A stretch of DNA of 64,000 bases from Oculina patagonica (taxonomy: Eukaryota). Within the stretch, counting starts at the first letter, position 1. Each line of letters opens with the position of its first letter. The notes below the pieces were generated by a model. That model did not search any database and was not told the DNA's origin. It worked only from the letters and a program-made list of their open reading frames with translations. Both the position numbers and the translations under genes were made by a program. This document shows positions 629 through 62,146 of the stretch, piece after piece. The DNA is taken from positions 496,001-560,000 of the forward strand of contig NC_135760.1 in the NCBI RefSeq assembly GCF_052425735.1, given 5' to 3'.

Positions 629-1552
629 ATGGCGAACTCAACAAAAGATGAAAACAACATTACAGACCAAGAGTTATTTTGCACGACAGGTCTTGGAACA
701 CATCAGAAGACATTTATTTCAGCATTTAATATTCCTCTCTCCATCACCGCATTTCTAGGGAATGTACTCATCATTGCTGCTCTTCAAAAAGTGTCGTCCC
801 TTCATCCACCATCAAAAATTCTGCTTGGTTGCCTTGCCAGCACTGATCTCTGTGTGGGTCTCATAACACAACCTCTTTACGTTTCTATGAAAATGTCTCC
901 AGAACACTCCAAATATTGCCTCTATCTTAAAATCCTTTTTGAGACTATAGGTTCCATGTTTTGTGCAGTATCTTTGTTAACAATGACTGCAATAAGTATT
1001 GACAGACTTCTCGCCCTGAGGTTGCGACTTAGATACAGACAGGTAGTAACTTTGATGAGAGTGCGGCTTGTTGTTGTTTCCTTTTGGCTCTTTAGTGCTT
1101 CTGTTGCAGCTATAGTGTTTTACAACTTTCTCATTGCTTCAAGCATCGCCTGCATTATAGTGTTATTGTGCATAGTAACCTCAACCTTCTGTTATACGAA
1201 AATCTATCTTACACTTCGCCATCACCAAACTCAAGTGCAAGACCATGTTCACCAAGGACAACAGAATGGAGGAGGAATTGCACTGAATATAGCACGATAC
1301 AGAAAGACAGTGTCTAGTGCACTGTGGATACAGATGACATTACTGGCTTGTTATCTTCCATATGCTATATTCGTTGGAATAATTGCAGTCACCGGATTAA
1401 CTAAATCATCTCTCGACATCGCTTGGGCTATAACAATATCTCTGCTTTTGTTAAACTCGTCCATTAATCCATTACTGTATTGTTGGAAGATGAGGGAAGT
1501 GCGACAAGCAGCGAAGGAGACAATCAGACAGTTTTGCTGCTTTTCAAATTAA
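629..1552 (+). CDS. Intronless rhodopsin-family (class A) GPCR, melanocortin/adenosine-receptor-like anthozoan expansion; array copy 1
   Basis: 307-aa ORF with 7 hydrophobic segments: GN in TM1, LASTD in TM2, SIDRL (DRY variant), CYLP in TM6, NPLLY in TM7, then helix 8 REVRQA and a CC palmitoylation-type motif. Confidence 0.93.
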   Translation: MANSTKDENNITDQELFCTTGLGTHQKTFISAFNIPLSITAFLGNVLIIAALQKVSSLHPPSKILLGCLASTDLCVGLITQPLYVSMKMSPEHSKYCLYLKILFETIGSMFCAVSLLTMTAISIDRLLALRLRLRYRQVVTLMRVRLVVVSFWLFSASVAAIVFYNFLIASSIACIIVLLCIVTSTFCYTKIYLTLRHHQTQVQDHVHQGQQNGGGIALNIARYRKTVSSALWIQMTLLACYLPYAIFVGIIAVTGLTKSSLDIAWAITISLLLLNSSINPLLYCWKMREVRQAAKETIRQFCCFSN

Positions 1553-5011: not shown

Positions 5012-5935
5012 ATGGCGAACTTAACTGAAGATGAAAGCCACATTACAGACCAAGAGTTAGTCTGTACAATAGGTCTTACAACACATCAGAAGATATCTAT
5101 TTTATCTTTTAATGTTCCTCTCTCCATCACGGCATTACTTGGGAATGTTCTCATAATTATTTCCCTTCAAAAGGTGTCGTCCCTTCATCCACCATCAAAA
5201 CTTCTGCTAGGTTGCCTGGCAAGCACCGACCTTGGTGTGGGTCTCATTACACAGCCTCTTCGCATAAGCTATTTTATGTCTCCAGAACACTCCAAGCGTT
5301 GCCACTACCTTAAAATCTTTTATGAGACTATAGGTTTAATGTTTTGTGGGGTATCTCTGTTCACACTGACTGCAATAAGTATTGACAGACTGCTCGCCTT
5401 GTTGTTGGGGCTGAGATACAGACAGGTAGTAACTTTGAGGAGAGTGCAGCTTGTTGTTGTTTCCTTTTGGCTTTTGAGTGCTGCTGTTGGAACGATAGTG
5501 TTTTTCAATTTTCTGATTGCTTCAAGCATCGCCTGCATTATAGTGTTATTGTGCATAGTAACCTCATCTTTCTGTTACACGAAAATTTATCTTACACTTC
5601 GCCATCACCAAACTCAAGTGCAAGACCATGTTCAGCAAAGACAACAGAATGGAGGAGGAATTGCACTGAATATAGCACGATACAGAAAGACAGTGTCTAG
5701 TGCACTGTGGATACAGATGACATTACTGGCTTGTTATCTTCCATATGCTATATTCGTAGGTATAATTGCAGTCACCGGATTATCTAAATCATCTCTTGAC
5801 ATCGCTTGGGCTATAACAATATCTCTGCTTTTGTTAAACTTATCCATTAATCCATTTCTGTATTGCTAGAAGTTGAGAGAGGTACGACAAGCAGTGAAGG
5901 AGACAATCACACAGTTTGGCTGCTTCTCAAGTTAA
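5012..5935 (+). pseudogene. Class A GPCR copy 2 with a premature stop (TGG>TAG) right after NPFLYC; C-terminally truncated allele or young pseudogene
   Basis: ORF 5012-5869 ends in TAG where the paralogs have TGG (Trp). The frame continues KLREVRQAVKETITQFGCFSS to TAA at 5933-5935, giving the same 924-nt length as copies 1 and 3. Confidence 0.85.
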
Positions 5936-10246: not shown

Positions 10247-11800
10247 CCTCGATTCTACAGTGAAAACCACTGTGTGTTCATAACACCGTCGGCTGAACGA
10301 CTGCACAATGATAAAAACAACACCATCACAGGATTTGAGACATCATATTAAAAAATAATATAAAATTAAGCCCTTTTTACGATTAATTCGACAAGTGGCT
10401 GAGTTAGAAGGGAAAATTTACTACAAATAAAACACTTTTCGCTGCGGAGACAAAAGATTACAATGATAGAATGGACAGCAAAATTATAAGAGCATATTTA
10501 TTTATTGCAATTTTCTGGGACAATTATGTCCAAGGGGGAAAGGTGAAAATATGAAAAGTAATAGAACAGACCAATTTTCAGCCGTGTTTCGTTGCTAGAT
10601 GCTAATTACCATGGGTAATTAGTGGATTCACCACAGCTGCTCCGGCGCGTGCTTGGAAATATTATTCAATTACGATTTTCTCAACTGAAACCCCTTTATC
10701 ATTTTTTAATCACCAGGAAAAAAGACATCTGAACCAGTCTTAAGACCAGCATGATGAAACAAGTATAGAAAATTATTGGAAACGTATTTCCTGACAGCCC
10801 TGCCCTTTTAAAAGAAAACTGATAAAAACTAAAGGAACACTGAGTCTTGTCGAAACAAGCTTAAAACGAAATGGCGAACTTAACAGAAGATGAAAACAAC
10901 ATTACAGACCAAGAGTTATTTTGCACGACAGGTCTTGGAACACATCACAAGACATTTATTTCAGCATTTAATATTCCACTCTCCATCACAGCATTTCTAG
11001 GGAATGTTATCATCATTGTTGCTCTTCAAAAAGTGTCGTCCCTTCATCCACCATCAAAAATTCTGCTAGGTTGCCTTGCCAGTACTGATCTCTGTGTGGG
11101 TCTCATAACACAACCTCTTTACGTTTCTATGAAAATGTCTCCAGACCACTCCAAATATTGCCTCTATCTTAAAATCCTTTTTGAGACTATAGGGTCCATG
11201 TTTTGTGCAGTATCTCTGTTAACAATGACTGCAATAAGCATAGACAGACTTCTCGCCCTGACGTTGCGACTAAGATACAGACAGGTAGTAACTTTGATGA
11301 GAGTGCGGCTTGTTGTTGTTTCCTTTTGGCTTTTTAGTGCTTCTGTTGCAATGATAGTGTTTTACAACTTTCTTATTGCTTCAAGCATCGCCTGCATTAT
11401 AGTGTTATTGTGCATAGTAACCTCAACCTTCTGTTATACGAAAATCTATCTTACACTTCGCCATCATCAAACTCAAGTGCAAGACCATGTTCAGCAAGGA
11501 CAACAGAATGGAGGAGGAATTGCACTGAATATAGCACGATACAGAAAGACAGTGTCTAGTGCACTGTGGATACAGATGACATTACTGGCTTGTTATCTTC
11601 CATATGCTATATTCGTTGGTATAATTGCAGTCACCGGATTAACTAAATCATCTCTCGACATCGCTTGGGCTATAACAATATCTCTGCTTTTGTTAAACTC
11701 GTCTATTAATCCATTACTGTATTGTTGGAAGATGAGGGAAGTAAGACAAGCAGTGAAGGAGACAATCAGACAGTTTTGCTGCTTTTCAAATTAACTATCC
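10247..11800 (+). repeat. Recent segmental duplication of window positions 1 to ~1556 (GPCR upstream region plus CDS)
   Basis: Sequence from cctcgattctacagtgaaaacc (~10247) onward matches position 1 onward almost base for base through the GPCR stop. Confidence 0.9.
10871..11794 (+). CDS. Intronless class A GPCR, array copy 3 (near-identical to copy 1)
   Basis: 307-aa ORF with the same motifs, differing from copy 1 at only a handful of residues; about 620 bp of upstream sequence is also duplicated. Confidence 0.93.
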   Translation: MANLTEDENNITDQELFCTTGLGTHHKTFISAFNIPLSITAFLGNVIIIVALQKVSSLHPPSKILLGCLASTDLCVGLITQPLYVSMKMSPDHSKYCLYLKILFETIGSMFCAVSLLTMTAISIDRLLALTLRLRYRQVVTLMRVRLVVVSFWLFSASVAMIVFYNFLIASSIACIIVLLCIVTSTFCYTKIYLTLRHHQTQVQDHVQQGQQNGGGIALNIARYRKTVSSALWIQMTLLACYLPYAIFVGIIAVTGLTKSSLDIAWAITISLLLLNSSINPLLYCWKMREVRQAVKETIRQFCCFSN

Positions 11801-17292: not shown

Positions 17293-18219
17293 ATGGCGAA
17301 CTTTACTGACGATGAAAACCACACAATCATTCAAGAATACTCTTGCACGATAGGTCTTGGAATACAGCAAAAGATATTTATTTTAGCATTAAATGTTCCT
17401 CTATCCATCACAGCATTTGTTGGAAATATTCTCATCATTGTTGCTCTTCAAAAGGTGTCCTCCGTTCATCCACCATCAAAACTTCTGCTAGGTTGCCTTG
17501 CCAGCACTGATCTCTGTGTGGGTCTCATTACACAGCCTCTTCGCATTAGCTATTTGATGTCTCCAGAACATACAAAGCGTTGTTACTACATTTTGTTATT
17601 TTATTACACCATAGGCTCTATGTTTTGTGGGGTATCTTTGTTAACACTGACTGCAATAAGTGTAGACAGACTTCTCGCCCTGTTGTTGGGACTAAGATAC
17701 AGACAGGTAGTAACTTTAAGGAGAGTGTGGCACCTTATTGTTTCCTTTTGGCTTTTTAGTGCTTCTGTTGCAATAATAGTGTTTTTCAACTTTCTTATTG
17801 TTTTAAGCATCGCCTTCATAGTACTGTTTTTGTGTATAGTAACCTCAACCTTCTGTTACACGAAAATCTATCTTACACTTCGCCATCACGAAACTCAAGT
17901 GCAAGACCATGTTCAGCAAGGACAACTGAATGGAGGAGGAATTGCACTGAATATAGCACGATACAGAAAGACAGTGTCAAGTGCACTGTGGATACAGATG
18001 ACCTTACTGGCTTGTTATCTTCCATATGGTCTAGTGATAGGTATAAATGCAGTCACCGGATTATCTAATTCAACTTTCAACTTTGCTTGGACTATAACAA
18101 TGTCTCTGCTTTTGTTAAACTCGTCCATTAATCCATTTCTGTATTGTTGGAAGATGAGAAAGGTACGACAAGCAGTGAAGGAGACAATCAGACAGTTTTG
18201 CTGTTTTGCTGTTAGTTAA
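17293..18219 (+). CDS. Intronless class A GPCR, array copy 4 (most divergent)
   Basis: 308-aa ORF with GN, LASTD, SVDRL, CYLP and NPFLY motifs. Confidence 0.93.
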   Translation: MANFTDDENHTIIQEYSCTIGLGIQQKIFILALNVPLSITAFVGNILIIVALQKVSSVHPPSKLLLGCLASTDLCVGLITQPLRISYLMSPEHTKRCYYILLFYYTIGSMFCGVSLLTLTAISVDRLLALLLGLRYRQVVTLRRVWHLIVSFWLFSASVAIIVFFNFLIVLSIAFIVLFLCIVTSTFCYTKIYLTLRHHETQVQDHVQQGQLNGGGIALNIARYRKTVSSALWIQMTLLACYLPYGLVIGINAVTGLSNSTFNFAWTITMSLLLLNSSINPFLYCWKMRKVRQAVKETIRQFCCFAVS

Positions 18220-24861: not shown

Positions 24862-25999
24862 TGTCGACGCTTTGAGCTCAACACTGGGGATTTGTGAATC
24901 TCGTGACTGTCACAACATCTCAGCTTACACGAAGAGTGAAAACTGGAACCAAGCCATTCACTAATTGGGACTGGGGCTGAAACACTTTCCCGCCGCGAAC
25001 CTTAACCGCGAACCTAACCGCGAACCCGCCGCGCCGTGACGCGCCGCCGTCGGAGCAAACCCCTGAGATTATTGACCATTATTCACTTCTTGCGAGTTCA
25101 TCAGATGCGTCCTTTAATATTTTTAGATCAATGTGACCAGGCATGCCCTCCGATGAACAACTCAGGGTAAAAGGAACCGAGGAAGGCCGAAAACAACATG
25201 AATTTGAAGAAGATCAGAAGTTCAACAAACTTTCTAAATTTGACTGAGTTGGAACTTAGTTAGCTGGAACCAACTGGAATAGGTCGCCAAGGATCTCTGG
25301 TGGACGAGCTATGTTCCAATGGTAACTAAAAGGTTTGAGTTTGTCAAGTCCAGTAGGTTGGTTTTGCCAAGGTCATGGGCTCCTGGTTTTGCTTTTATAA
25401 AGCTTACTCCTGCCCCTCGTGTAATTTTCTTTTTTTTCTCTCTTCAGAAGAATGAGCACTTTTTAAACCAAGAATTTTGCGCAAAAGTGAATTCAGTGAA
25501 ATTTTAAGAGGTTTTAAGAAGGGATAATTTTTTTAGAACACCACCAGACAGTTGACCCCCACTCAAGAGTACCCCAAGTTATCGGGGGACTGTTGGTGTC
25601 CATCTACTAATTTTTTACTTCAAATTCTAATTTTAAAATCACAATAAATCTTCAATATTTCTTATCTTACTTCTCTATGGCCTTTGAGAAGAACTTTCTC
25701 CTCCTAAACATCCCCAAAATCACCCAAAAGTTTACAAAACACCGCAAAACATAGATTCGAGAAATGAGCAGAGAGTTTTTGGATTGCTTCTGATTACTTA
25801 AAACGCGAACGAGATATTCGAGTAAAAGGGCTGTTTATGTTTTAAAAAGGAAAAGTTAATTGGCGGAAACATGATTCATATTAAAGTCAAAAAACACACC
25901 CTTTATGAGACTAAAACAAGATTCAAAGATTATAGAACGACCTTTTACTATCCATGGTTTGTGTAAAACGCTGTGTAACCGGGCACGAGTTAACACCGC

Positions 26000-26130
26000 G
26001 GCCTCACGTGATAGGCATGTGGACGAATTTTCTCGACCGATCACCGCCTTTTATTTCAGTTTAAACCTCGGTTGTCGTCAGCTACAGCGCGCGCTATTAC
26101 GTCACAATGGATTAAGGTATAAAAGGGTCG
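26000..26130 (+). promoter_or_regulatory. Candidate promoter of the uncharacterised gene: E-box, CRE-like site, TATA box
   Basis: tcacgtga at ~26004, ttacgtca at ~26097 and tataaaag at ~26118, about 90 bp before the ATG at 26206. Confidence 0.5.
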
Positions 26131-26205
26131 CGCGTCGACAAAAATCATGAGTTGACAGTTGAAATTTGTTGAGATAGCTTTACTACGTTTGCTTACAGAA
26201 TCGAG

Positions 26206-29200
26206 ATGATGGGTTGGGTATTTAGTAGAAACGAAGCGTTGAGCTTCAGGAAGAAGAAAAAGGTGAGCAAACTTCAAATGGTAGTGAACGTTTCTCAAAA
26301 ATTGTTAAAAAATGATGCTTTTCCATCGATTTTGCGCGACTGCTTGTTCAAACGGTTTTTGCAAACCGTTAAACTTTGTGACATCAATGCACACGGCTTC
26401 CAAATTTAAAATTTGCGCGAGACCTGGGACGAAACTTGTGTTGCGTGAAACCTGGTAACTAAAAAAAATCATCATTTTCACTGAAAAAAATAAACAGCCT
26501 GTATTTTGTCTTTACCGAGTACTTAGCAGCTAGCTCCTTTCTTTACGGAAGGAGCTAACTACCATGTTTTCGGTATAGACTACGGTCGTTTATGGTCATC
26601 TGCTTGCGGCTATTTCAGGTTTTGATGTTCTTCGAGCTCGCAATTTTGTCAAATAAAAACTGTGCACTTGATTGCTTTGAACTCCTTTTCTTCAACATTT
26701 TCATTAAGCAAGGGCGTATATATTGTAATGCAGTAATTTTTTTCATTGTCTCTGAAAAGCCGCCATGGGGAGTTGACAATAAAATTTGTATTGTATTTTA
26801 TTGTATTGTTCCCGATTAAAAAGGAGATTGGAATGAGTCCATTTAAGGCGCTGTTATACTAGGCAATGTTTGATGAAATTTGCTCCGCAATATTTTGTTG
26901 CGCCGTTGCGAGACAAACACTTTGATAAACAAGGAACGTGCTCAGTGTAAAGCGGATTAGTGGAAAACACGGGGCCGAGGTCCCGGGGTCCCGGGGTGTG
27001 GAAAACGCGGGGTCCCGGGGTCTGTAGAAAACACGGGGTGTGGAAAACGCGGGGTCCCGGGGTCTGTGGAAAATGCGGGGTCCCGGGGTCTAAAAATAAA
27101 AAGATCTAGACGGTGAAAAAAAAATTCTGGCTGAAAAGACATGTATAATAGTTTATCACCAAAGTTAATACATTCGTAAAACGTATTTCCTTGCATTGAA
27201 AGCCTATTTTTCATGTCGTAAAAAAGCCATTCAAGTTTGTGAATCATATACTTGTCTTTGCGATCCTTTAAATATCGTATTTTTTCCATTTTAAAAAAAG
27301 AAACTAATTATGAGTTATATACATTTTGTTAGTTGGAAATAATTTTTTGTCAAAAATTAACCTACAAATTTTTATCCTGAATCCGAAAACATTAAGACAA
27401 ACTACGCGCCAACAACGTCCATGACTGGCACTGCGCTGACTTCATTCACCTAGTTTCATTCATGAATCGGCGTGCGGTGCCGTGGTTTTGGCATTACCGA
27501 GTATTTAGGATGAGGAATATCTGTCATGACAATCTCAAATGTGAACACTTTTGTCACTTCACGCCTGGATTACTGCAACAGTATACTTTACGGCCTTCCT
27601 AAGCTTGAGCATGATAAACTGCAGCCGAATAAAGAACATTGCAGCGCGACTGATTACTGGAACCAAGCGGAAAGAACACATAACTCCCACCCTCAAGGAC
27701 ATGCACTGGCTTCCTGTCAAATTACGCATCGTTTTTAAGATCCTACTTTTAACCAACAAAGCCCTTAATTGTCAATCACTAACCTACTTAACTTGTCTTT
27801 TTAACGCCTATAAACCAGCTCGTTCCCTACGATCATCTGGCCAATGAATCTTACAAATTCCTGACGTGAAAACATGTTCATACGGTCAAAGTTCCTTTTC
27901 TTTTTACGCCCCTAAACTTTGGAACGACCTACCTTTTCATATCACTGATAGGGTCTGAGGGCATAGCGATTTTTAAAAAGAACCCTAAAACATTTCACAA
28001 GCCGCTAGTAACTGTTTTCAAAACAAAAAACAAATTCAACTTCGGAATAAAAAATACGTGGGACCCCGTGTTTTCCACAGACCCCGGGACCCCGCGTTTT
28101 CCACACCCCGTGTTTTCCACACCCCGGAACCCCGGGTAGGCACACACTAGGGGACAAGTCGCAGGGACTTATCCCTTAGTGTGTACACACTAAAAAAATG
28201 ACCGATTTGTGGGACTGGTCCCTGCGACTATAGTCCCAGAAACCAAACCATGCAGCTTAATTCGTTGGACTAGTCGCAGGGTGTGGTCCCTGCGACTAGA
28301 ATTTCGATGCAAAATTTGAGTACACACTAGGGGACTGGTCCCCGAAGCAAGTTCCCGCGACAAGTCCCTGCGACTAGTCCCCTAGTGTGTGTCGACCTTA
28401 ACAGCGCAGTCCATTGCAGCGTTCAGTTTGCGCAAACGCTTGTTGAAATGCCGAAAACGTTGAGAGACATGTATAGTTCAGCGAGTGTTACATGCGGCAT
28501 TTTTTTGCAAACGATGTCACAGCAATTAAAATTGAGAAGTTGCACAAAAAATTGCTAGTAGAAACCGTCGTCTTTGCAGATCGACCCATATTACACCAGT
28601 GTACAAAAACAAACCGGATAGGTCACAGAAGATGTTTGAATCATCGGCAAACGATTAGCCTGCGAGAGCAGACGCATTTCCGGCCGTCGCTTCCTCCGCC
28701 GAAAATAGCGCGCGAACCGAGCCAGAGAATGATTTCTGTGACGTCATTTCAAGGTAACCAACACAATTACCTGCAACAAGGTGCCACGCGGAGTCTGCGA
28801 GAGCACGCACAACGCGGAGAAAAAATGGCGAATGAGTTGGACACCACTGCGAGGGGAGCAGATGCACAAGAAGGAGAGAGAAGACGACTCACAATCTCGA
28901 ATGGATTGGGATCGGACACAGACAGATGGAGAACCGGAACATGGATCCTCGCCGCCAAAGTGGAGAAGACAGCAGCCAGCACGCGCGAAAGCGGACCGCC
29001 GAGAAAAAGCCAGCCGAGACACACACACCAGGAGGGAGGAACGAGGGACGAGCAGAGACACACCAGCGAAGAAGCGGAGGACCGCCGGGGGAAGGCGGGA
29101 ACGGACACAAGGAGGGAAGAGTGAGAGGGGAGGACCCTACGGGGAGAAAAGAGGAAAGAAAGGGAATGGGAAGTGAGTAGGTGAAGAGGGGGGAGGGGGA

Positions 29201-31730
29201 GGAGATGAGTGTGAAGAGAAAGGGGAGGCACAAGGGAAGAGAAACGAACTGGCAGGAAAGGACGAAGAAGCAGGTGAGGGCGTGTAGCTAACGGCGAGAA
29301 GAGAATGGAAGAAAAAAGAAGACAGACGAAAGAGAAGGAACGGGAGAAACCGAGTCAACAGCTGAGACAGCGATGTGGAGGGAGGGGGTGTGACGTGTTG
29401 GCGAAGAGGAAAGGGAAACAAAAGATGCGACGCACGAAATCACCGGCCGGGCAGACGTTTTTTCGGCGGAGAGAAGCGACGGCCGGAAATGCGTCTGCTC
29501 TCGCAGGCTAGCAAACGATGGGTCATATTTGCCGCTCATATTCTGAAATACCCAGCGATCAGGCGTTCTGTTTCTTTCCTACCGCCGCAGAAAAAGGAAC
29601 GCCGCCCGATCGCAGGTTAATTCTGAAAAGTAAATTACAGCAAAGCGCAACACTTGAAAACCTACGGGTCGAAAAAACAACAACAATAGCTTTCCTTCAT
29701 TTGTATAGGCTCGGCTTATGTAGAGTTCGACGTTTGACTCGGGTCCTGTTCCATTTACCTTAAAACAACTGAAGTATATAAATCTGTTTTCATTTAGACT
29801 GTAAAGATAGACAAGATATACCATGGCCATGAATGCTTTTCAACATCTCTACACAGCGTTCACCCCGTCAAGAAGCCAGAAAGTCGCCCTATACCATCAA
29901 AGGGCGCACGATTTAACATCTCATTCATATACGAGGGTATTCTTCAGGAATACTCAACCTTGGGCTTCTTGATGGGAGGGAGGAACTTTCCTGACGGGGA
30001 ACTGGTTTTTAAGGAAAGAGAGGAAAGAAAACCAGCATTACAAGGTATTGCCTTTTAACCTTTTATCACAGTTTAACCATTCACGTCCCCAGAGCCGCTT
30101 TACCCTCTTCGCCGGGTAGGCCTGGGGCATGAGAAACAAGTAGTCCAGACCTACTTACTCTGAAAGTGCCGTCAAATAAAATTTTCCAATATGGGGTTGG
30201 CACGGAGGGGCTGACGGCTAGCGCTTGCAATTTGATTGACAAATCTATGTCAGCTATTTATATATACCACAACCGGTGTCAAACCCTGACTCGGCCCCAT
30301 TCGTCTTCAAACAGCACGCTTTAAATGGAGAGATGCGCGCGAGACCGGTGGGAGGAGGGGGGGGGGGGGGGAGAGGGAAGCAGGGTCGGTATACCCATCT
30401 CTCCCTTTGCTTTATAAAGACGACTAGGGACGAGTCAGTGCCGAGCCTATGTGATACTAATAGTGTTTATATATTGTACCTGTTTTTAGACAGTACTAAA
30501 GTTCCTCCTCCACAAATTGACATCCCCGTCTCTTTACCAGCTGCTGTCTCGAGCCACGAAGGTAATGCTTTCTCACATACAAGTAAATTGGTATTTTTAG
30601 AATGATGATACAGGGATTGTTTCTCACTCTTTTGGACTGGATTTGAATTAGACCTCATCAAACTTATCAGTTGGCTGACATTTAAGTTTTTGGGCTCATT
30701 CATTGTGTCAAGTCTTACACAAATTTTAAACTTGTACCTACCAGTGTTGATAATATCATTGTGAGTGAGTATATATGTTTAAGTTCGTGTCGCTCTTTTG
30801 ATGAATACTAACCTATTATTTTCTTCTTTTTTTACCCTTGTCAGCTATTCGTAAAGTTGCTGCTAAGACAATGCGCACCACCGTGAATTTACCGGACTGT
30901 CTTAGCTATCAAGGTAAATTTGAGCAAAAGGCAAAATTTCCGTTCAAGCCATAAGGCTGTTAATTATTCCCCACCCCGGGTCGGCAGCCAAGAATCGACA
31001 TAAGTATTTCTACCCCATTACCCCGCCTATGGTTTGCCCCTCCCCCATCCCCACTCACGCGACATTTTAAAATTCGTATTTGGGAGGCACTGTGAGAGTT
31101 AAGTGTCCTGCCTATGACATTAAATGAAACAACTACGGAACTGTCTTAGTGATGTGAAAGTAATACGCTTTTTGTAATTTCAAGGTGAACACTAATTATT
31201 CTTTCTTTTAACAGGCCTTCATGAATATGGATATCATCTGTTCTGGCTTGAATCAGCAACATACTGCCGCTCTTTGGAGAGCCTGACTGCGTAAGTGTTT
31301 TAAGTTTTTTTAATCTTTTCTTGGTGCTCTTAGGAATTTAAAATGGAGTTGATGAATTTATTGAATATATTATAATTGCCGTTACGTTACATCAAAGTTA
31401 TTAGCTTGCAAACAGCCGATAAGAAACAATTATTTTGTTAGGACTTTTAATGTAATTTATATTTCATGCACATAATCAAGAAATATCTTGAAGCGCAGCG
31501 TTCAAATCGAATACATTTCTAGCTTGTTTAATAAAGTGTCTTCTGCGGTAATCAGTATAAAATATATTTATTTTTTCTCGTTCCACAGCCACATATCAGA
31601 GGCAATTAGTAGCGTGGTTGGAGGGAGAATGTTTAAGATCGTGTACCGAGAACACCATGATGGCACAGCCTACCTCCCTCACCAATTAACCCATGCCGGG
31701 GAACTTTTTGACACCCTATGTACCCGGTAG
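26206..31730 (+). CDS. Uncharacterised 220-aa protein, six coding exons
   Basis: Exons 26206-26262, 29798-30044, 30490-30561, 30845-30913, 31215-31290 and 31589-31730. All introns are GT-AG with matching phases (0,1,1,1,2), giving 663 nt with no internal stop. The exon 1 link is the least certain part. Confidence 0.75.
26960..28137. mobile_element. Inverted-repeat element with arrays of tggaaaac(a/g)cgggg(gtcccgggg) sub-terminal repeats
   Basis: The repeat array at 26960-27090 is the reverse complement of the array at 28060-28137. Confidence 0.7.
27530..27995 (+). mobile_element. Frameshifted L2/CR1-clade LINE ORF2 C-terminal fragment
   Basis: FVTSRLDYCNSILYGLP / NIAARLITGTKRKEHITPTLKDMHWLPV..RIVFKILLL..YKPARSLRSS / FYAPKLWNDLP, split across frames. 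Confidence 0.88.
28137..28399. mobile_element. MITE with cacacactagggga..gtcgcagggact inverted repeats
   Basis: cacacactaggggacaagtcgcagggactt at the left end versus aagtccctgcgactagtcccctagtgtgtg at the right end. Confidence 0.7.
28656..29510. mobile_element. Young TIR element with 9-bp target duplication and purine-skewed interior
   Basis: Perfect TIR tagcctgcgagagcagacgcatttccggccgtcgcttc; gcaaacgat at 28647-28655 and 29511-29519. Confidence 0.9.
29549..29619. mobile_element. 71-bp mini-MITE with 9-bp target duplication
   Basis: tacccagcgatc / gatcgcaggtta ends; attctgaaa at 29540-29548 and 29620-29628. Confidence 0.65.
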
Positions 31731-31944
31731 GTAATGGGAATAATAATAATTAAGTCTGTAGGTCTGCAGTTTATATTGACTATATTGTTAACAAGTAATT
31801 TCACATTTATTCCTTCTAAACAAATGTCTACCAATGTTTAACGTTTGTAATAGAAACGACACTTATTTTTAATCAAGCTTTAAAATAAGAGTTCATCAAG
31901 ATTCAAGAATAAAAGTAAAAATATTCGATGCTGTGTGTAGCACT

Positions 31945-32115
31945 CAAAATAATTTTCAACAAGTGTTCAATAGTGTTCAAAACAATTTTCAACAAGTGTT
32001 TAATAGTGTTCAAAACAATTTTCAACAAGTGTTTAATAGTGTTCAAAAGAATTTTCAACAAGTGTTTAATAGTGTTCAAAAGAATTTTCAACAAGTGTTC
32101 AATGGTGTTCAAAAT
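31945..32115. repeat. 33-bp minisatellite, about 5 copies
   Basis: Unit aattttcaacaagtgtt(t/c)aatagtgttcaaaa(c/ag) repeated in tandem. Confidence 0.9.
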
Positions 32116-32124
32116 AACATGTTT

Positions 32125-32385
32125 ATTGTGAAGTTTATATGTAATTTATGAAGTTAATCTAAGGATGAAACGTGTAATTTATGAAGTTTATGTAAGGATG
32201 AAACGTAATTTATGTAGTTTATGACGTTAATCTAAGGATGCTATCTGTAATTTATGACGTTCTTCTAAATAATTCAACTTTAACATGTAATGTATGAATG
32301 ATGCTTATCTAAGAATGTAAACTGTAATTTGTAGTAAAGTTTATCTATGGAATTGGTGCGCCTGTAAGTTTTGAAGTTTATCTAA
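32125..32385. repeat. Degenerate ~30-bp tandem repeat
   Basis: Recurrent tgtaatttatga(a/c)gtt..atctaaggatg units. Confidence 0.7.
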
Positions 32386-32834
32386 AAATACAGCTCTCTT
32401 TTTTTCAACTAGAACTATGTAATACAGATCAATCTATTTTAGCTGAAATCTTGTTCTGAGTCACATTAATTACTGGAAAATTCTTCGTTCATGTCATTGA
32501 TTCCTACTGTTACGAATAAAACTCTTTTAAATCGCGTTAAATTAAAATGTTCTGACCTGTTTAATCTATGAACTAGGTAAGGTGGTAGTCTTTATTTAAC
32601 GAGGGTAGCACTAAAATAGCATAAAAACACTAACAAACCAGTGGCCCTCAATAATTATTTACAATAAAATATAAAAATACTCAGATGATCGATTGGCATG
32701 AATTATCTTTTATAACTCTGTTTTCAATGTTGTAACAATTAATTCTTTTTCTTGAATTACAAATAAACAAAAATAAAAGAAATTGCTTGTGTTGTCTTTG
32801 ATCTATTTATTATACAGTGTGATCCAGATTTCTC

Positions 32835-32978
32835 TGACTACGAGCAGTCCTATTTTTTCGCAGAGCCCAGCGAAGCGAACGAGTTCGTCGAGCAAGCGAA
32901 AAATACGCCCCCCCCCGCGCGACGCGAGCCGACGACCCTCTCAGCCGGGACGCGAAAAAAAGGGACAGCTCGTAGTCA
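32835..32978. mobile_element. MITE with 9-bp target duplication
   Basis: tgactacgagcagtcc / ggacagctcgtagtca ends; agatttctc at 32826-32834 and 32979-32987. Confidence 0.75.
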
Positions 32979-34190
32979 AGATTTCTCAAACCCTTGGTTT
33001 CTTTAATATCCCTGTAACTCAAACCAAAAGTCGTTTCCCTTGACTTTGCTTCACACAGTCAAACATTGCAATTTTACGCCTATTTTCCAGCTCTTGTACA
33101 GCTGCGTACGTTTTCAAATAATTTTTAAAAAATGAGCGACTCTCGAGAGTTCCGTTGCAGGAACTCAATTTTCACAGTCCAGCCTGCGAACAGGCTCCCT
33201 AGTGGAGTGTAAGGCAAAAATAATGGGTGAGGGGAGCGGGCCGAAAAAATAATCGGTAAAGAAAGCCGAGCGCGTTTTCGATGCGAGTCTTCCCTGCCTC
33301 TACGCCTAGTCCACACAATCAAAAAGAAGCGTGAGCGCTCACGAGTACTCCGAAAGCAATTGCTCCTACAAATACGTCATGTTGCTTAGCAACTTTTGGG
33401 ACGAAAACCGCGGGCTCAGTCACTTCTCGGAGAAGTGATGTCGCCATCAACTGGCACTTGTTTCCCGGACTGTAGTCATGTAACTTATATGAAAATGAGT
33501 TTCACCTACAAATTGCAAAAATGCAAATAAAATGCAAATCAAACTCATTTTCATTTGAATTGTTCGCACGTAGACTCATTTTGAAACAGAGGCAAAGGGG
33601 AACTCGGAAATGACCAATTACTAGACCACACTAGAATACAGTTTAAAAAAATTTTTATTTCAGGATTTTACATTTTACACAACCTCTTTACAAAACGTAA
33701 AGCAATTTATTTCCTTTATAAATAATAGCATATGTTCATGACAACCTATTTACAAACATTTTCTTTATATACAACGGCATAATTTTATAATGGCGAATAA
33801 ACTTTTTTCACAGGGCCGTATGATAAACTAAGATTTCAAAAGCGATAAAAATAAAACTAAACAAATGCAAAAGTACAAGCTCAATAGCGTACAATTGGTT
33901 CAGCTAGCTACACCCAAAATTGAGTGTTTCTTCCCCAGATGTGGTTGTAATTTTTGAGTCTACGTGAAATTGCAGTAATTTCCTTCGTGCTGTTTACTGT
34001 GTCAAGATCTTTCCAAGTAAAAAAAGAATCGAAAATTTGTAAAATTTATAGTTCGAGTTTATCATTTATGCTCTCTATGGTATCTAAATATTTTTTGTTT
34101 TCATTTAATTTTAAAATAATACATTTTCTGTTTCCTTTACGTGAAGACTATTTTGTCCTTTATAGAAGCTACAGTAGTAACAATGTCATA

Positions 34191-51847: not shown

Positions 51848-54800
51848 ATGGGGGGCCATCATTCGCAATTTACAGAAGAAGAACTGAAAGATTATCAGGT
51901 AAAACATTCATTTATAAACATTTTGGATATTTCTGCTGTTTCTGCTAGTCCTTATAATGTTAATTTTGCATTTGGGTGGAAATTCATGACGATACTAACG
52001 AGCGATTTGAATGTGTTTACAATTTATAGGAACTGACGTATTTCACACAAAAGGAAATCTTACAGTGAGTTTTTTGCTGTTTCCTGTAATTTATGGGGAA
52101 GCCATGCAGTTTATTAGTACCTGTAGTAAATTTAATACGTTAACGTTGTGTTTGTGTCGACTGTACGTAATTAAAGGCTACCTATACAGCTTAATTATAA
52201 GTTTTCTAAACATAAGCTTGAACATGTCACTGCAGCTTTCATGACTAGTATAGGAGGAATGTTTAAAATCAGCAGCTAGGGAGCAAACTGCTCATCAGAT
52301 TGTTTCTGCAAGACATTGTATCCTTTAAATACCTGATTCTTACCAAGTACCATGTAGTGTACCTTGACAATAACAGTTTGATACAAGAATCCAAACCATG
52401 AATATACTTGCAAGGTGTCATGTTATGCACCATGTTATGACAATTTACTAGTAATACGTGACTCGCAGGGCCTCGCGAAGCTCTGGGTTGGGGAGGGAGG
52501 GGGGAGGGGGTCTTATAAATAAGGAGACACCCTCGTTCCCAGTGTCTACTCCGCTTTAAAAATGGCGGCTCTTTCTGGTTCGTAAAGAGGTATAAAGCGT
52601 TGGGAAGCGCAGGCTATTTTCAAAATCATCGACAAATTATTGGATATTCGCATTTTGGACATTTATTTCAGGGCATTAAAAAAAAAAAGAAGAACGAACG
52701 GCAGGAGGATTCGAACCCTCCGCCCGCGCGCCTCTGATGGCCATGAAAGGTTTATAGCTTGAATTGGCGTTGAGGGAGTATTATGTGCAAATCAGTGGTA
52801 CAGTTTAATCCGAAAAGAAAAACGATAAAAATGAAAGGCTCAGGATTCAAACCCACACAAAAAAAAAGTAAAAAAAAAAAGAAAAAAAAAAACTTTAGCC
52901 GGATTCGAACCCCTGCCCTCAGTCCAGAAGATCTGATTTGAAGTCCGACGCTCACACCATTAGGCCACCAGCGCGCGGCCGTGTGACGTCATTTCCGCCA
53001 TACACCAAGCTCACAAATATATATATATATATATGACCGTAAACTCCACACGAGATTTCATCCCGCCTGAGCCCTTTGAGGGACAAAATTATACACCCCG
53101 CTACGCTCGGCCTTCGGCCTTGCTTCGCGAGGAAAAATTCATTTATTTTTTCGTATAAATTTATGTAAGTTTTTGCATAGAGCAGCCACATGATACACAT
53201 CTTCCTTGAAGCAGTGGGGTTGTTAGCTTGTGAGTTAGAAAGCAAATAAGCAAAATAGACTAAATGCTCATTGTACATACATTCTTGAGTCACAATTTTA
53301 ATATATTCTAGGATCTATCAAAGGAAGGTTAATCTCTCGCTTGGAAGTTAATATCTTTAGATCATTGGATGCAGTTTTTTTATGTTTTGCTTGGTCTGGG
53401 GTACTAGATTGGTGGTTTCATAAATAATACTCATCAGTTAGTATGACTTAAGCCCTGTGCTTTGAAATAGCATCCATGGCAAGTCGTAACATTCTCTTAG
53501 TGTCGAAGTTGCCCAGTTACGTACCCTGCAAATATAATGCAATTGACTTGCATTTGATTTCACACTACCACTTTGGGTGTTTATGAACAATTAAGCCCCA
53601 CTAAAAGGCTGTCAGTAAATTGTCGGCCACCAGTCAGCTAACAGTTTATCAACAGTTTACTGACATATACCTCACAATGGTGAAATTTGTGGTTGCTTTA
53701 AGCAGATGTAAGTTTATAAAATATTGTCTGCGATGGAGTTTGGATGAAATCCAAAGAGGTGTTTTATTTAATTCTTTAGTTGTCACAAAAGGTTTGCACA
53801 ACTTGACCCAGATGCTGTGAGGACCAACAAGAATGCAAAACTTCCTTCAAGAAAGATCATGACCTTACCAGAACTAAGGGTATGTTAATGCCTCAAGTTT
53901 TTCAGTAGTAAAGGTTTATTAATTTGTAGTTAAAGGCGCAAATTAATTCAAAATTAGACAAACCATTGTTTCAAGCATGGTGGCAGTTGCTGAATTTGTT
54001 CTACTTTCTTAAACTTTAAGCATGTGATGCATGGAAAGTGACAAGTAGCGTATTATGGTGTATTTAATCACAGAAAATAAATTTATTACAGCGATTGCAG
54101 GTAACAGAACGTGGCTCTATTATGTGTGAAACTTACAGACAATTGCAAGTGGATTACAATGAATGGAAACCCATTGCATGTACACATATATTATTTTCCA
54201 GATTTTTGCACCATGTTGTAGATTGTTTGACCTATGAAGTCAATGAGGCCATTTTGAGTTGGTAGAAACATTTTTTTTAAGTTACAGTAAAATTGTCTCT
54301 TTCTGTGCAGGTGAATCCATTTAAAGACAGAATTTGCAAAGTGTTTTCATCCTCAAAGGATGGTGAACTCACGTTTGAAGACTTCTTGGATATGATGTCT
54401 GTATTTAGTGAGAATGTGAGTTAACTTTACAAACTTGCTAACAAGTCCGTTCAAAAGTTTTCCAGACCAGTTGACTGTTTAATTCAGTTCCCACTGTTTT
54501 ATCTACCTTCGCCAGCACTCACTTTCATAATGAAATTCCTAGTTTATCAATTATTGGATGAGGCTGAATATGATATGAAGAATTATGCAGATCGAGGAGG
54601 GTGTTATTCGGCTTCAGCAGATAACACCCTCCTCGATCTGCATAATTCTTCATATCATACGAAAGCCGAATTCAATAATTGTTTTATTATTCATTCAAAA
54701 TATTTCCAGAGCTCCAAATGCACAAAATGAATTTAATAGGGTTTTGACAGTAGACAAAGTACACAAATACACAACAATGTTCGCTTTTAAATTTGATTTA

Positions 54801-61600: not shown

Positions 61601-62146
61601 CTCTTTGACTCCCAGGCAGACTATTATTGTTACTATGAGAACCAGTGCGAAGGCTAAGAGATCGGGAAACGGTGCGAGCGCAGGCACTCGCCAATCGCCG
61701 AATTCTTCCATAAAGTACCTATATACTGAACCGTTGCATAGAAAGTTAATGTACTCGCTACAAGCCGCTGCAAGTGAGGCGGCGGAAAGAACATACTCAG
61801 TGATCATACACCAGCCTGTTATAAACGCCCAGATCTCGCCCATGGCTACGTACGTGTAGATATAGCCGGAACCAGCGCGGTTCACCCGGGATGCAAACTC
61901 CGCATAGCAGAGACCGGCCAGGAGCGATGCGACAGCGGCAATCAAGAAGGATAGGATGACGGCTGGGCCGGCTACGGAGTGCGCAAGCTGCCCAATAACA
62001 ACATACAACCCCGCGTCTATCAACGATCCGATTCCAAGAGCTGTCAGATCGAAAACGTTCATACATCTCTTGAGAGGAGTGTCAGACGGGATAAAGTCAT
62101 CAGTCTTCCGCCTGGTCAAGCTTTTGACGAATTTATAGCCGAACAT
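58630..62146 (-). CDS. Cationic amino-acid transporter (SLC7A1-4/CAT family, APC superfamily), two coding exons
   Basis: Exon 62146-60445 contains LKRCMNVFDLTALGIGS, AGPAVILSF, LCYAEFASR, FAPYGWSG, FYCFIGFD, EEAINP and FMVPCVPFLP. It is spliced in phase 1 to 58763-58630 (GMFVYLLYGYHNS..LPLK*). The ATG at 62146 is preferred to the ORF track's upstream TTG. Confidence 0.92.

What the first reader, a model, noticed from the sequence alone, without database searches (positions are those of the whole stretch)
26206..31730. Hidden six-exon gene encoding a 220-aa protein of no recognisable family
Seen: six exons join through five GT-AG introns with matching phases into one stop-free frame (MMGWVFSRNEALSFRKKKKTVKIDKIYHGHECFSTSLHSVHPVKKPESRPIPSKGARFNISFIYEGILQEYSTLGFLMGGRNFPDGELVFKEREERKPALQDSTKVPPPQIDIPVSLPAAVSSHEAIRKVAAKTMRTTVNLPDCLSYQGLHEYGYHLFWLESATYCRSLESLTAHISEAISSVVGGRMFKIVYREHHDGTAYLPHQLTHAGELFDTLCTR). 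It follows an E-box/CRE/TATA promoter, and the ORF track shows only fragments of it. Inference: two globular halves joined by a Pro-rich linker, with an RKKKK possible NLS. The C-terminal helix plus FKIVYRE..DG loosely recalls a PB1/beta-grasp fold, which is weak. It may be a lineage-restricted, inducible gene.
Basis: partly seen in the sequence, partly recalled or inferred. Interest (0 to 1): 0.7.

Follow-up and report, generated by a model that had tools for sequence, protein, structure and literature searches.

The report
Expressed truncated copy of coral Sec14-like gene
The six-exon gene is real and transcribed, but it is not an orphan: it is a tail-less duplicate of a coral-specific, lipid-anchored Sec14/BCH-like gene, has lost its last three exons, and is probably decaying.

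Summary
Spliced transcript contigs from two public runs carry all five junctions.

- **Already annotated.** The genome is Oculina patagonica. The gene is RefSeq LOC144645524 and GenBank ACROYT_G008440, each with a different imperfect model.
- **Part of a small stony-coral family.** Every full-length member checked at its start begins MGC[I/V/C]FSR followed by a basic patch, a myristoyl plus palmitoyl motif. All have a disordered N-terminal half with one strongly conserved motif, and about 65 further C-terminal residues.
- **Fold of the C-terminal domain.** In the paralogue, residues 140-279 fold as a Sec14/CRAL-TRIO domain closest to BNIP-2-type BCH domains (Foldseek 3e-9, VIA-align Z 9.7).
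- **What the window copy is.** It is an inverted 7-kb duplicate of LOC144645971, which lies 450 kb away. A 1.7-kb stretch holding exons 7-9 is replaced by a 33-nt minisatellite, so about 40% of the domain is missing.
- **Other damage.** The start now reads MMGW instead of MGC. In a relative about 3% diverged, the orthologous transcript carries an 11-nt frameshift in exon 4.

dN/dS against the parent is 0.29, so the loss of constraint looks recent. The PB1 and NLS readings are not supported.

The parts
25960..26139 (+). Promoter shared with the parent paralogue. It holds an E-box CACGTG (26005-26010), a CRE-like TTACGTCA (26097-26104) and TATAAAAG (26118-26125).
   Evidence: It is 92% identical to the paralogue's promoter, against 85-88% in introns, and all three motifs are identical. 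The homology with the paralogue begins at 25960.
26140..26262 (+). 5'UTR and exon 1 (CDS 26206-26262). It reads MMGWVFSRNEALSFRKKKK, a degraded form of the family's MGC[IV]FSR plus basic patch lipidation motif.
   Evidence: A transcript contig covers 26140-26262. The paralogue has ATA ATG GGT TGC where the window has ATG ATG GGT TGG. Cys3 is conserved in all other members.
26942..28407 (.). Transposon-like insertion in intron 1, absent from the paralogue. It has long terminal inverted repeats, and a 263-nt MITE-like element at 28135-28397 lies next to its right arm.
   Evidence: Inverted repeats I1, I2, I4, I5 and I6. There is a gap in the homology with the paralogue between 26941 and 28408.
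28656..29513 (.). Second inverted-repeat element in intron 1, with perfect 38-nt terminal repeats. Its purine-rich ORF was wrongly used as the N-terminus in GenBank model ACROYT_G008440.
   Evidence: Inverted repeat I3 is 100% complementary. The region is absent from the paralogue. The N-terminus of P0002 matches the ORF at 28492-29124.
29798..30044 (+). Exon 2. It holds the family's most conserved motif, IYEGILQEYSTLGFLMGGRNFPDGELVF.
   Evidence: Joints on both sides. It is 94% identical to the paralogue. An exhaustive HMMER search found 11 hits; ten are relatives that share this motif and the eleventh (P0009) is an unrelated repeat protein.
30490..30561 (+). Exon 3, a 72-nt in-frame cassette encoding the Pro-rich linker. 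It is skipped in some isoforms.
   Evidence: Joints. RefSeq isoform X2 (P0016) and paralogue isoform X2 (P0001) lack it. The Desmophyllum proteins P0006 and P0012 differ by the same segment.
30845..30913 (+). Exon 4. An 11-nt deletion (30884-30894, between ACCG direct repeats) is seen in the orthologous transcript of 'organism A'.
   Evidence: Joints. Contig arithmetic 24+247+72+41+17+28 = 429 shows that exon 4 is 58 nt rather than 69 nt in X1 and X4 (tables 5, 5c and 8).
31215..31290 (+). Exon 5, the start of the Sec14-like domain (first two strands). The RefSeq models read on into intron 5 and stop at TAA 31292-31294.
   Evidence: Joints. P0015 and P0016 end in ...LTA. A 3-nt indel at 31283 is present in X5 and X6.
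31589..31730 (+). Exon 6 with stop TAG 31728-31730. The stop lies in what is the first codon of intron 6 in the parent, where the donor CG|GTAGGT is used; the window keeps that donor sequence.
   Evidence: The acceptor joint is at 31589, and contigs read through to 31848-31853. The donor sequence is identical in the paralogue, where it splices to exon 7.
31731..31954 (+). Remnant of the parent's intron 6, now 3'UTR. A possible poly(A) signal AATAAA lies at 31908-31913.
   Evidence: It is 86% identical to the paralogue's intron 6. The homology ends 22 nt before the paralogue's exon-7 acceptor.
31944..32114 (.). 33-nt minisatellite (5.2 copies). It sits where the parent has 1.72 kb holding exons 7, 8 and 9 and the first ~160 nt of its 3'UTR.
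   Evidence: TRF gives period 33 and 96% matches. Alignment to the paralogue. No tail exon is present anywhere in the window.
32137..33096 (+). Relic of the parent's distal 3'UTR, with a conserved AATAAA at 32515-32520, followed by downstream flank. This marks the end of the duplicated segment.
   Evidence: 32139-32542 is 94% identical to the paralogue's 3'UTR. The homology ends at 33096.

Best explanation
The locus is LOC144645524 of Oculina patagonica. It is a transcribed, correctly spliced, 3'-truncated duplicate of LOC144645971, which lies about 450 kb away on the same chromosome in inverted orientation.

The parent family is specific to stony corals. Its members have an N-terminal myristoylation/palmitoylation motif (MGC[I/V/C]FSR plus a basic patch). 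This is followed by about 140 disordered residues that carry one highly conserved motif, and then a C-terminal Sec14/CRAL-TRIO domain closest to BNIP-2-type BCH domains. The family probably makes membrane-anchored adaptors that bind lipids or small GTPases (inferred).

After a single-gene duplication of about 7 kb (dS about 0.17), the window copy lost a 1.7-kb stretch containing exons 7-9. Exon 6 now reads through its former donor into an immediately adjacent TAG and has become the terminal exon.

The product (220 aa, or 174/150 aa in the RefSeq isoforms) lacks about 40% of the domain. The missing part includes the strand-helix segment that corresponds to the BCH signature. The lipidation motif is also spoiled by an extra upstream Met and a Cys3-to-Trp change.

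The copy most likely no longer performs the family's function and is at an early stage of decay. It is still driven by the conserved promoter.
For: **Gene model and expression.** The model and all five junctions are confirmed.

**Identity and family.**

**Duplication and exon loss.**
- The window segment 25960-33096 matches C3:80171-72769.
- Exons 7-9 are present in the paralogue.
- At the window locus they are replaced by a minisatellite.
- tblastn finds no tail exon anywhere in the window.
- All seven other members examined have the tail: three in O. patagonica, two in Desmophyllum and three loci from ENA assemblies.

**Fold of the paralogue.**
- AF2 gives pLDDT 75-90 for residues 140-279.
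- All of the top 50 Foldseek PDB hits are Sec14/CRAL-TRIO/BCH, best E 1e-5.
- AFDB hits are BNIP2, caytaxin, Prune2, GDAP2 and ARHGAP1/8, best E 3e-9.
- VIA-align gives Z 9.7 over 136 residues to CRALBP.
- ESM features score 0.93 to PF13716 clusters.
- PF13716 scores 14 bits, below threshold.

**Truncated window protein.** Its AF2 model has mean pLDDT 44.6, and the last 26 residues are below 50.

**Signs of decay.**
- Window-derived changes include C3W, G198D and a new upstream ATG.
- The orthologous transcript in organism A carries an 11-nt frameshift in exon 4.
- Two solitary exon-2 relics elsewhere in the genome show that the family sheds copies.
Against: The remaining 660-nt frame is intact in this assembly, and all ten splice sites are intact.

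dN/dS against the parent is 0.29, which caps the window lineage at about 0.58 even if the parent had no replacements.

Derived amino-acid changes are split evenly, 7 in the window copy and 7 in the parent.

Exons (94-96%), the promoter (92%) and the relic 3'UTR (94%) are better conserved than introns (85-88%).

These facts fit either a recent loss of the tail or selection on the truncated protein.

The frameshift in organism A is inferred from alignment tables, not from reading the contig itself. X1 and X4 belong to one study, and organism A is coded and about 3% diverged.

The Sec14 assignment rests on a model built from only six sequences, and no sequence search reaches a curated threshold.
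Confidence: 0.8

Rival explanations
1. The truncated copy is kept by selection as a new, shorter protein. It would be a soluble, non-lipidated form that keeps the family's conserved N-terminal motif and the first half of the domain. It would act as a decoy or dominant-negative regulator of its membrane-anchored paralogues.
For: - The ORF and splice sites are intact, and pairwise dN/dS is 0.29.
- Replacements on this branch show no excess, 7 against 7.
- The promoter and the relic 3'UTR with its AATAAA are conserved.
- The locus is transcribed and correctly spliced.
- The exon-2 motif is fully retained.
Against: - The orthologous transcript in a relative about 3% diverged has an 11-nt frameshift in exon 4 and an S7R change.
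- A half Sec14 domain is not predicted to fold.
- Changes at otherwise invariant residues (C3W, G198D) look like relaxation.
- RefSeq's transcript-based models end even earlier.
- The low dN/dS can be inherited from the period before the deletion.
Confidence: 0.17
2. One reading: a lineage-restricted orphan gene that is complete as found, with a new or PB1/beta-grasp-like fold and a nuclear localisation signal.
For: No Pfam hit on any exon piece. Named homologues come only from stony corals; the other hits are unnamed contigs.
Against: The gene is colinear with a longer parent that has three more exons. The family fold is Sec14-like. The KKKK patch follows a lipidation motif in all paralogues. 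No PB1 or beta-grasp entry is among the fold rows returned.
Confidence: 0.02
3. The family's domain is not a CRAL-TRIO relative. It would be another SpoIIAA-like or alpha/beta fold, such as STAS or TIR, that merely resembles Sec14.
For: STAS domains score Z 8.2-8.4, close to the Sec14 hits. The family profile hits a PDB TIR chain, 8fz9, at E 0.0024 over 37 residues. Z 9.7 is only moderately above the background of 7-8 quoted by the tool.
Against: - All top 50 Foldseek PDB hits and all 30 AFDB Swiss-Prot hits are Sec14/BCH proteins.
- The aligned length is 133-137 residues for Sec14, against 107-112 for STAS.
- Language-model features and the only Pfam hint both point to PF13716.
- The ...IVxH(K/N)PSW segment resembles the hhhhHPs end of the BCH signature.
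- TIR is absent from the 80 fold rows returned.
Confidence: 0.08

Closest known systems
BNIP-2 / caytaxin / Prune2 / BNIPL family (BCH domain, Pfam PF13716 CRAL_TRIO_2)
   Same: The architecture of the full-length paralogues matches: a long disordered N-terminal region followed by one C-terminal BCH/Sec14-like domain of about 140 residues. These are the best AFDB fold matches, E 3e-9 to 8e-8. The ...IVxHxPSW strand-turn resembles the end of the BCH signature.
   Different: - No sequence match reaches the Pfam threshold (14 bits against 23).
- The Arg/Lys patch of the BCH signature R(R/K)h(R/K)(R/K)NL(R/K)xhhhhHPs is absent.
- The coral family starts with a myristoyl/palmitoyl motif and carries its own conserved N-terminal motif.
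- The window copy lacks the signature-bearing part altogether.
Sec14 / CRAL-TRIO lipid-transfer domains (CRALBP, alpha-TTP, Sfh2, NF1 Sec14-PH)
   Same: These are the best matches among solved structures: Z 9.1-9.7, 133-137 residues aligned, rmsd 3.3-3.5; Foldseek E 1e-5.
   Different: Identity is only 9-15%. Only the C-terminal alpha/beta part of the Sec14 domain is matched, and the N-terminal helical part of classical Sec14 proteins is absent. Ligand binding is untested.
Unprocessed (duplicated) pseudogenes and truncated gene duplicates
   Same: The copy retains the introns, promoter and flanks of its parent. It has lost essential 3' exons by deletion and is still transcribed. Other copies in the genome are reduced to single-exon relics.
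   Different: The remaining frame has no stop or frameshift in this assembly, and the pairwise dN/dS is low.
Dually acylated N-termini of the MGC type (Src-family kinases Lck/Fyn, G-alpha-i); from established knowledge, not tested here
   Same: The paralogues begin M-G-C-x-x-S-R followed by a Lys/Arg run. This is the textbook context for N-myristoylation of Gly2 and palmitoylation of Cys3 with an added electrostatic patch.
   Different: The window copy reads M-M-G-W. It has an extra Met before Gly and a Trp in place of Cys, and both changes are unfavourable for acylation.

Membership tests
CRAL_TRIO_2 / BCH domain (Pfam PF13716) | Sequence score at or above the curated Pfam cut-off (23 bits) | tested here: not met
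   The five exon pieces of the window protein give no hit at E<=10. Among paralogues the best is P0008 at 14 bits, E 0.063, and only 1 of 6 members hits at all. Canonical PF13716 genes do exist elsewhere in this genome.
CRAL_TRIO_2 / BCH domain (Pfam PF13716) | Sec14-like alpha/beta fold of the domain (full-length family members) | tested here: met
   AF2 model of P0013 residues 140-279, pLDDT 75-90. The top 50 Foldseek PDB hits are all Sec14/CRAL-TRIO/BCH. AFDB gives BNIP2 at E 2.9e-9. Z is 9.7 to CRALBP and 8.5 to the yeast BCH domain.
CRAL_TRIO_2 / BCH domain (Pfam PF13716) | A complete domain in the window's own protein | tested here: not met
   The protein ends at the equivalent of P0013 residue 221, so two strands and three helices are missing. 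The exons encoding them are deleted. The AF2 model of the truncated protein has mean pLDDT 44.6.
CRAL_TRIO_2 / BCH domain (Pfam PF13716) | BCH signature R(R/K)h(R/K)(R/K)NL(R/K)xhhhhHPs (PMC3313917) | tested here: not met
   The paralogues have TR(L/F)GxQLxRI(V/I)x(H/Y)(K/N)PSW. The hydrophobic run and PS are present with one extra residue, but the Arg/Lys patch is absent. The window copy lacks the whole segment.
CRAL_TRIO_2 / BCH domain (Pfam PF13716) | Binding of a lipid or of Rho/Ras GTPases | not testable with these tools
   Needs biochemistry.
N-myristoylated / palmitoylated proteins (MGC type) | Gly at position 2 after the initiator Met, a small residue at 6, Cys3 for palmitate | tested here: not met
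   The window reads MMGWVFS. The upstream ATG is new (ATA in the paralogue) and Cys3 is replaced by Trp. Every paralogue whose 5' end was examined reads MGC[I/V/C]FSR(K/N) followed by a basic patch. Acylation itself was not tested.
   In the paralogue's model the segment is strand 190-195 of a Sec14-like sheet. No PB1 or ubiquitin-like entry is among the 50 PDB or 30 Swiss-Prot rows returned.
Unprocessed pseudogene / truncated duplicate | Colinear with a parent gene including introns and flanks, with loss of an essential part | tested here: met
   Homology runs across the promoter, all introns and the 3' flank. Exons 7-9 are replaced by a minisatellite.
Unprocessed pseudogene / truncated duplicate | Disabling mutations or neutral evolution in the remaining frame | tested here: inconclusive
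   This assembly shows none, and dN/dS is 0.29. An 11-nt frameshift and a premature stop are inferred in the orthologous transcript of organism A.

The most novel reading that the evidence does not exclude
The tail-less copy is a selected innovation rather than debris. By losing both its lipid anchor and the closing half of its Sec14-like domain, while keeping the family's conserved N-terminal motif and its promoter, it would have become a soluble competitor. It would titrate the partner of its membrane-bound paralogues. That would make it a natural dominant-negative within a coral-specific family of dually acylated BCH-like adaptors.
Probability: 0.17. Interest if true: 0.45.

Novelty: new member of a known kind. 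Interest (0 to 1): 0.3.

Why it matters
For annotation, three models of this gene disagree.
- RefSeq stops in intron 5.
- GenBank borrows a transposon ORF as the N-terminus.

All family members are labelled 'uncharacterized', although the full-length ones can now be described as lipid-anchored Sec14/BCH-like proteins.

For biology, the family is a small lineage-restricted offshoot of the CRAL-TRIO superfamily in stony corals. It has its own conserved motif and shows visible birth-and-death dynamics: three full genes, one expressed truncated copy and at least two single-exon relics in one genome.

None of this overturns anything known. The window locus itself is most likely a gene on its way out.

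Tried and rejected
- **Pfam on the exon pieces and on six family members.** Nothing reached threshold.
- **Family profile against PDB sequences.** The only hit was a 37-residue match to a TIR chain, 8fz9, at E 0.0024. I treated it as chance because TIR is absent from the 80 fold rows returned.
- **tblastn of the paralogues' C-terminal tails against the whole window.** Only noise, E >= 0.07, so exons 7-9 are not hiding downstream.
- **Profile-profile test against genuine BCH proteins.** This could not be done. Canonical PF13716 exons of this genome were located. Full-length BCH proteins could not be fetched by reference, because of the length window of the homologue search.
- **Naming the organisms behind the short exon-2-like hits.** The cluster look-up gave no names. 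Their contigs come from ENA assemblies ERZ25067556 and ERZ25878340.
- **The scan's earlier notes and the literature.** Neither held anything on this family.
- **STAS as an alternative fold.** Considered, and kept as a low-probability rival.
- **Gene conversion as the cause of exon conservation.** Rejected. Exons of 70-250 nt at 94-96% identity alternate with introns at 85-88%.
- The 3' end beyond 31950, the deletion in other individuals and the frameshift in organism A could therefore not be re-examined.

Full report
**1. The observation**

| Exon | Coordinates |
|---|---|
| E1 | 26206-26262 |
| E2 | 29798-30044 |
| E3 | 30490-30561 |
| E4 | 30845-30913 |
| E5 | 31215-31290 |
| E6 | 31589-31727, TAG at 31728-31730 |

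Three codons are split G|NN and one is split GC|C. Every intron is GT..AG with a pyrimidine-rich acceptor.

Public runs were searched with 29700-31800, and four were laid on 26050-31950.
- Contigs of X1 and X4 (one study, 'organism A', labelled RNA by guess) skip exactly 26263-29797, 30045-30489, 30562-30844 and 30914-31214.
- They also join 31282 to 31589. The five unaligned letters, together with a 3-nt indel at 31283 seen in X5 and X6, place that joint at the predicted donor.
- X6, which behaves as DNA, has none of these joints. The joined forms are therefore spliced RNA.
- A contig begins at about 26140, just after the TATA box.
- Others run unspliced from 31589 past the stop to 31848-31853.

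The gene model is confirmed.

**2. Who it is**

An exhaustive HMMER search with exon 2 and two word-based searches returned only coral proteins. Their NCBI names identify the genome as Oculina patagonica.

The window gene is already on record twice.
- RefSeq LOC144645524: isoform X1 is 174 aa, covers exons 1-5 and reads into intron 5; isoform X2 is 150 aa and lacks exon 3.
- GenBank ACROYT_G008440 is 295 aa. Its N-terminus is taken from a purine-rich ORF inside a transposon in intron 1, joined to exons 2-6.

Neither model equals the junction-supported six-exon model.

**3. The family**

O. patagonica has three full-length paralogues.
- LOC144645971 on the same chromosome at 72.8-80.2 kb, minus strand.
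- LOC144647279 at 26.71 Mb.
- LOC144632708 on contig 12.

Desmophyllum pertusum has two proteins of the family. Three further loci sit on ENA assembly contigs.

Shared features:
- Every member whose 5' end was examined starts MGC[I/V/C]FSR(K/N)..., followed by a Lys/Arg patch.
- All share the exon-2 motif I(Y/F)ENIxQEYSTL(A/G)FLMGGKxFPDxELVF.
- All continue about 65 residues beyond the point where the window protein stops. That extension runs (L/F)GxQLxRIVxH(K/N)PSWYVQ ... LGKLTGFPG and is encoded by three more exons.

Two further places in the genome keep only an exon-2-like relic.

**4. The fold**

No Pfam family reaches threshold. The only hint is PF13716 (CRAL_TRIO_2) at 14 bits on one paralogue.

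Language-model features place P0013 among PF13716 clusters (0.93, 186 shared features).

AlphaFold2 on the six-sequence family alignment leaves residues 1-139 disordered. It folds 140-279 at pLDDT 75-90, in the order strand, strand, helix, helix, strand, helix, strand, helix, helix, strand, helix.

| Search | Result |
|---|---|
| Foldseek vs PDB | Top 50 hits all Sec14/CRAL-TRIO/BCH, best E 1e-5 |
| Foldseek vs AFDB Swiss-Prot | BNIP2, gacY, Prune2, caytaxin, BNIPL, GDAP2, ARHGAP1/8, NF1; E 3e-9 to 4e-5 |
| VIA-align | Z 9.7 (CRALBP, 136 aligned, rmsd 3.3); 9.5 (NF1 Sec14); 8.5 (yeast BCH); STAS 8.2-8.4 over fewer residues |

The published BCH signature R(R/K)h(R/K)(R/K)NL(R/K)xhhhhHPs (PMC3313917) is only half present. 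The family has the hydrophobic run and PS but no Arg/Lys patch.

I therefore file the family as a divergent Sec14/CRAL-TRIO superfamily member with BNIP-2-like architecture, not as a bona fide BCH family member.

**5. What happened to the window copy**

Window 25960-33096 is colinear, in inverted orientation, with C3:80171-72769. This is a single-gene duplication.

Differences from the parent:
- Intron 1 has gained two blocks of inverted-repeat elements, 26942-28407 and 28656-29513.
- Homology continues through exon 6 and into the parent's intron 6 up to 31954, which is 22 nt before the parent's exon-7 acceptor. It resumes at 32137, about 160 nt after the parent's stop codon.
- The parent's intervening 1.72 kb (exons 7, 8, 9) is represented only by a 33-nt x 5.2 minisatellite at 31944-32114.
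- The start of that minisatellite belongs to a dispersed repeat.
- No tail exon exists anywhere in the window.
- The exon-6 donor CG|GTAGGT is unchanged, but there is nothing left to splice to. Read-through gives CGG TAG.
- The relic 3'UTR, with its AATAAA at 32515-32520, is 94% identical to the parent.

At the 5' end the parent's ATA ATG GGT TGC has become ATG ATG GGT TGG. This adds an extra Met and turns Cys3 into Trp.

The truncated protein ends inside the long helix 205-225 of the domain model. It loses two strands and three helices. Its own AF2 model has mean pLDDT 44.6.

**6. Constraint or decay?**

| Segment | Identity to the parent |
|---|---|
| Exons 2, 3, 4, 6 | 94-96% |
| Introns | 85-88% (intron 5: 78%) |
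| Promoter | 92% |
| Distal 3'UTR | 94% |

Other measures:
- Nei-Gojobori on 218 codons gives dS 0.166, dN 0.048 and dN/dS 0.29. Even with a perfectly conserved parent, the window branch could not average above about 0.58.
- Polarised by four outgroups, replacements split 7 (window), 7 (parent) and 8 ambiguous.
- The only coding indels are in frame.

The copy was therefore under purifying selection for most of its life.

Against continuing function:
- Changes hit otherwise invariant residues (C3W, G198D).
- The lipidation context is spoiled.
- The orthologous transcript in organism A has an exon 4 of 58 nt instead of 69 nt. Organism A is about 3% diverged, judged from a 0.29-0.39 share of 31-mers. 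The contig adds up as 24+247+72+41+17+28 = 429.
- That is an 11-nt deletion between ACCG repeats. It shifts the frame onto a TAG three codons later.
- Organism A also shows an S7R change at the Ser of the myristoylation motif.

I infer a recent loss of the tail followed by the onset of decay. A maintained truncated protein remains possible (about 0.17).

**7. How it most likely works**

Shown:
- the promoter with E-box, CRE-like site and TATA box is shared with the parent;
- transcription starts near 26140;
- the five introns are removed;
- exon 3 is an optional cassette, in this gene according to RefSeq and in the parent according to contigs and RefSeq;
- exon 6 is terminal.

Inferred:
- the full-length family members are tethered to membranes by myristate, palmitate and a basic patch;
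- they use the Sec14/BCH-like domain to bind a lipid or a small GTPase, and the N-terminal motif to bind a partner;
- the window product can do neither anchoring nor pocket formation.

**8. Verdict**

The sequence observation is correct and the gene is real. It is not a hidden orphan. It is an annotated, expressed, truncated duplicate in a small coral-specific branch of a well-known superfamily.

The useful yields are a corrected gene model, a fold assignment for an 'uncharacterized' coral family, and a clean example of exon loss turning an internal exon into a terminal one. Interest is modest.

Noticed in passing
window 629-1552, 5012-5869, 10871-11794, 17293-18219 (+): Four tandem intronless ORFs of 285-308 aa, all rhodopsin-type GPCRs (PF00001, E 1e-26 to 1e-29). 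An ENA contig carrying a family member (L013) also has a 7tm_1 gene about 6 kb upstream, which may be conserved linkage.
   Followed up: partly
window 60413-62305 (-): A 630-aa single-exon ORF with AA_permease_2 (E 8e-49) and AA_permease_C. This is a cationic amino-acid transporter-type gene.
   Followed up: partly
window 28492-29124 (+) and 28767-29231 (-): Long purine-rich ORFs inside an 858-nt element with perfect 38-nt terminal inverted repeats in intron 1. The + ORF supplies the spurious N-terminus of GenBank protein ACROYT_G008440.
   Followed up: partly
window 26942-28407: A composite transposon-like insertion. Its ~60-110-nt arms are built of GGGGTCCCGGGG / GTGGAAAAC(G/A)CGGGG repeats, and a 263-nt MITE-like element at 28135-28397 lies next to its right arm. 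Contig depth over these parts is very high in all runs, so they belong to abundant repeat families.
   Followed up: partly
window 52447-53137: Matches (87-100%) an insertion inside intron 5 of the paralogue (C3:75653-76277). It is a dispersed repeat shared by both regions.
   Followed up: no
G000:C4:31862547-31862645 (L005/L018) and G000:C12:12460933-12461013 (L006/L019): Solitary exon-2-like relics of the family with no other family exon within about 4-6 kb. These are probably dead copies.
   Followed up: partly
window 31283-31285: The CTG (Leu173) of the window is absent from runs X5 and X6 and from the paralogue. It is either an in-frame insertion specific to this assembly or species, or a polymorphism.
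   Followed up: no
window 31937-31978: The first ~42 nt at the start of the 33-nt minisatellite occur at 87-93% identity in at least nine other places of the genome. The exon-removing rearrangement may therefore have involved a repeat element.
   Followed up: partly
window 29904 and 29981 (contig of X1/X4 at ~92% identity): The contig that otherwise looks like the paralogue's exon-3-less isoform shows two single-base deletions in exon 2 relative to the window. The assembled paralogue does not have them. Their meaning is unexplained; they may reflect another copy or species differences in organism A.
   Followed up: no
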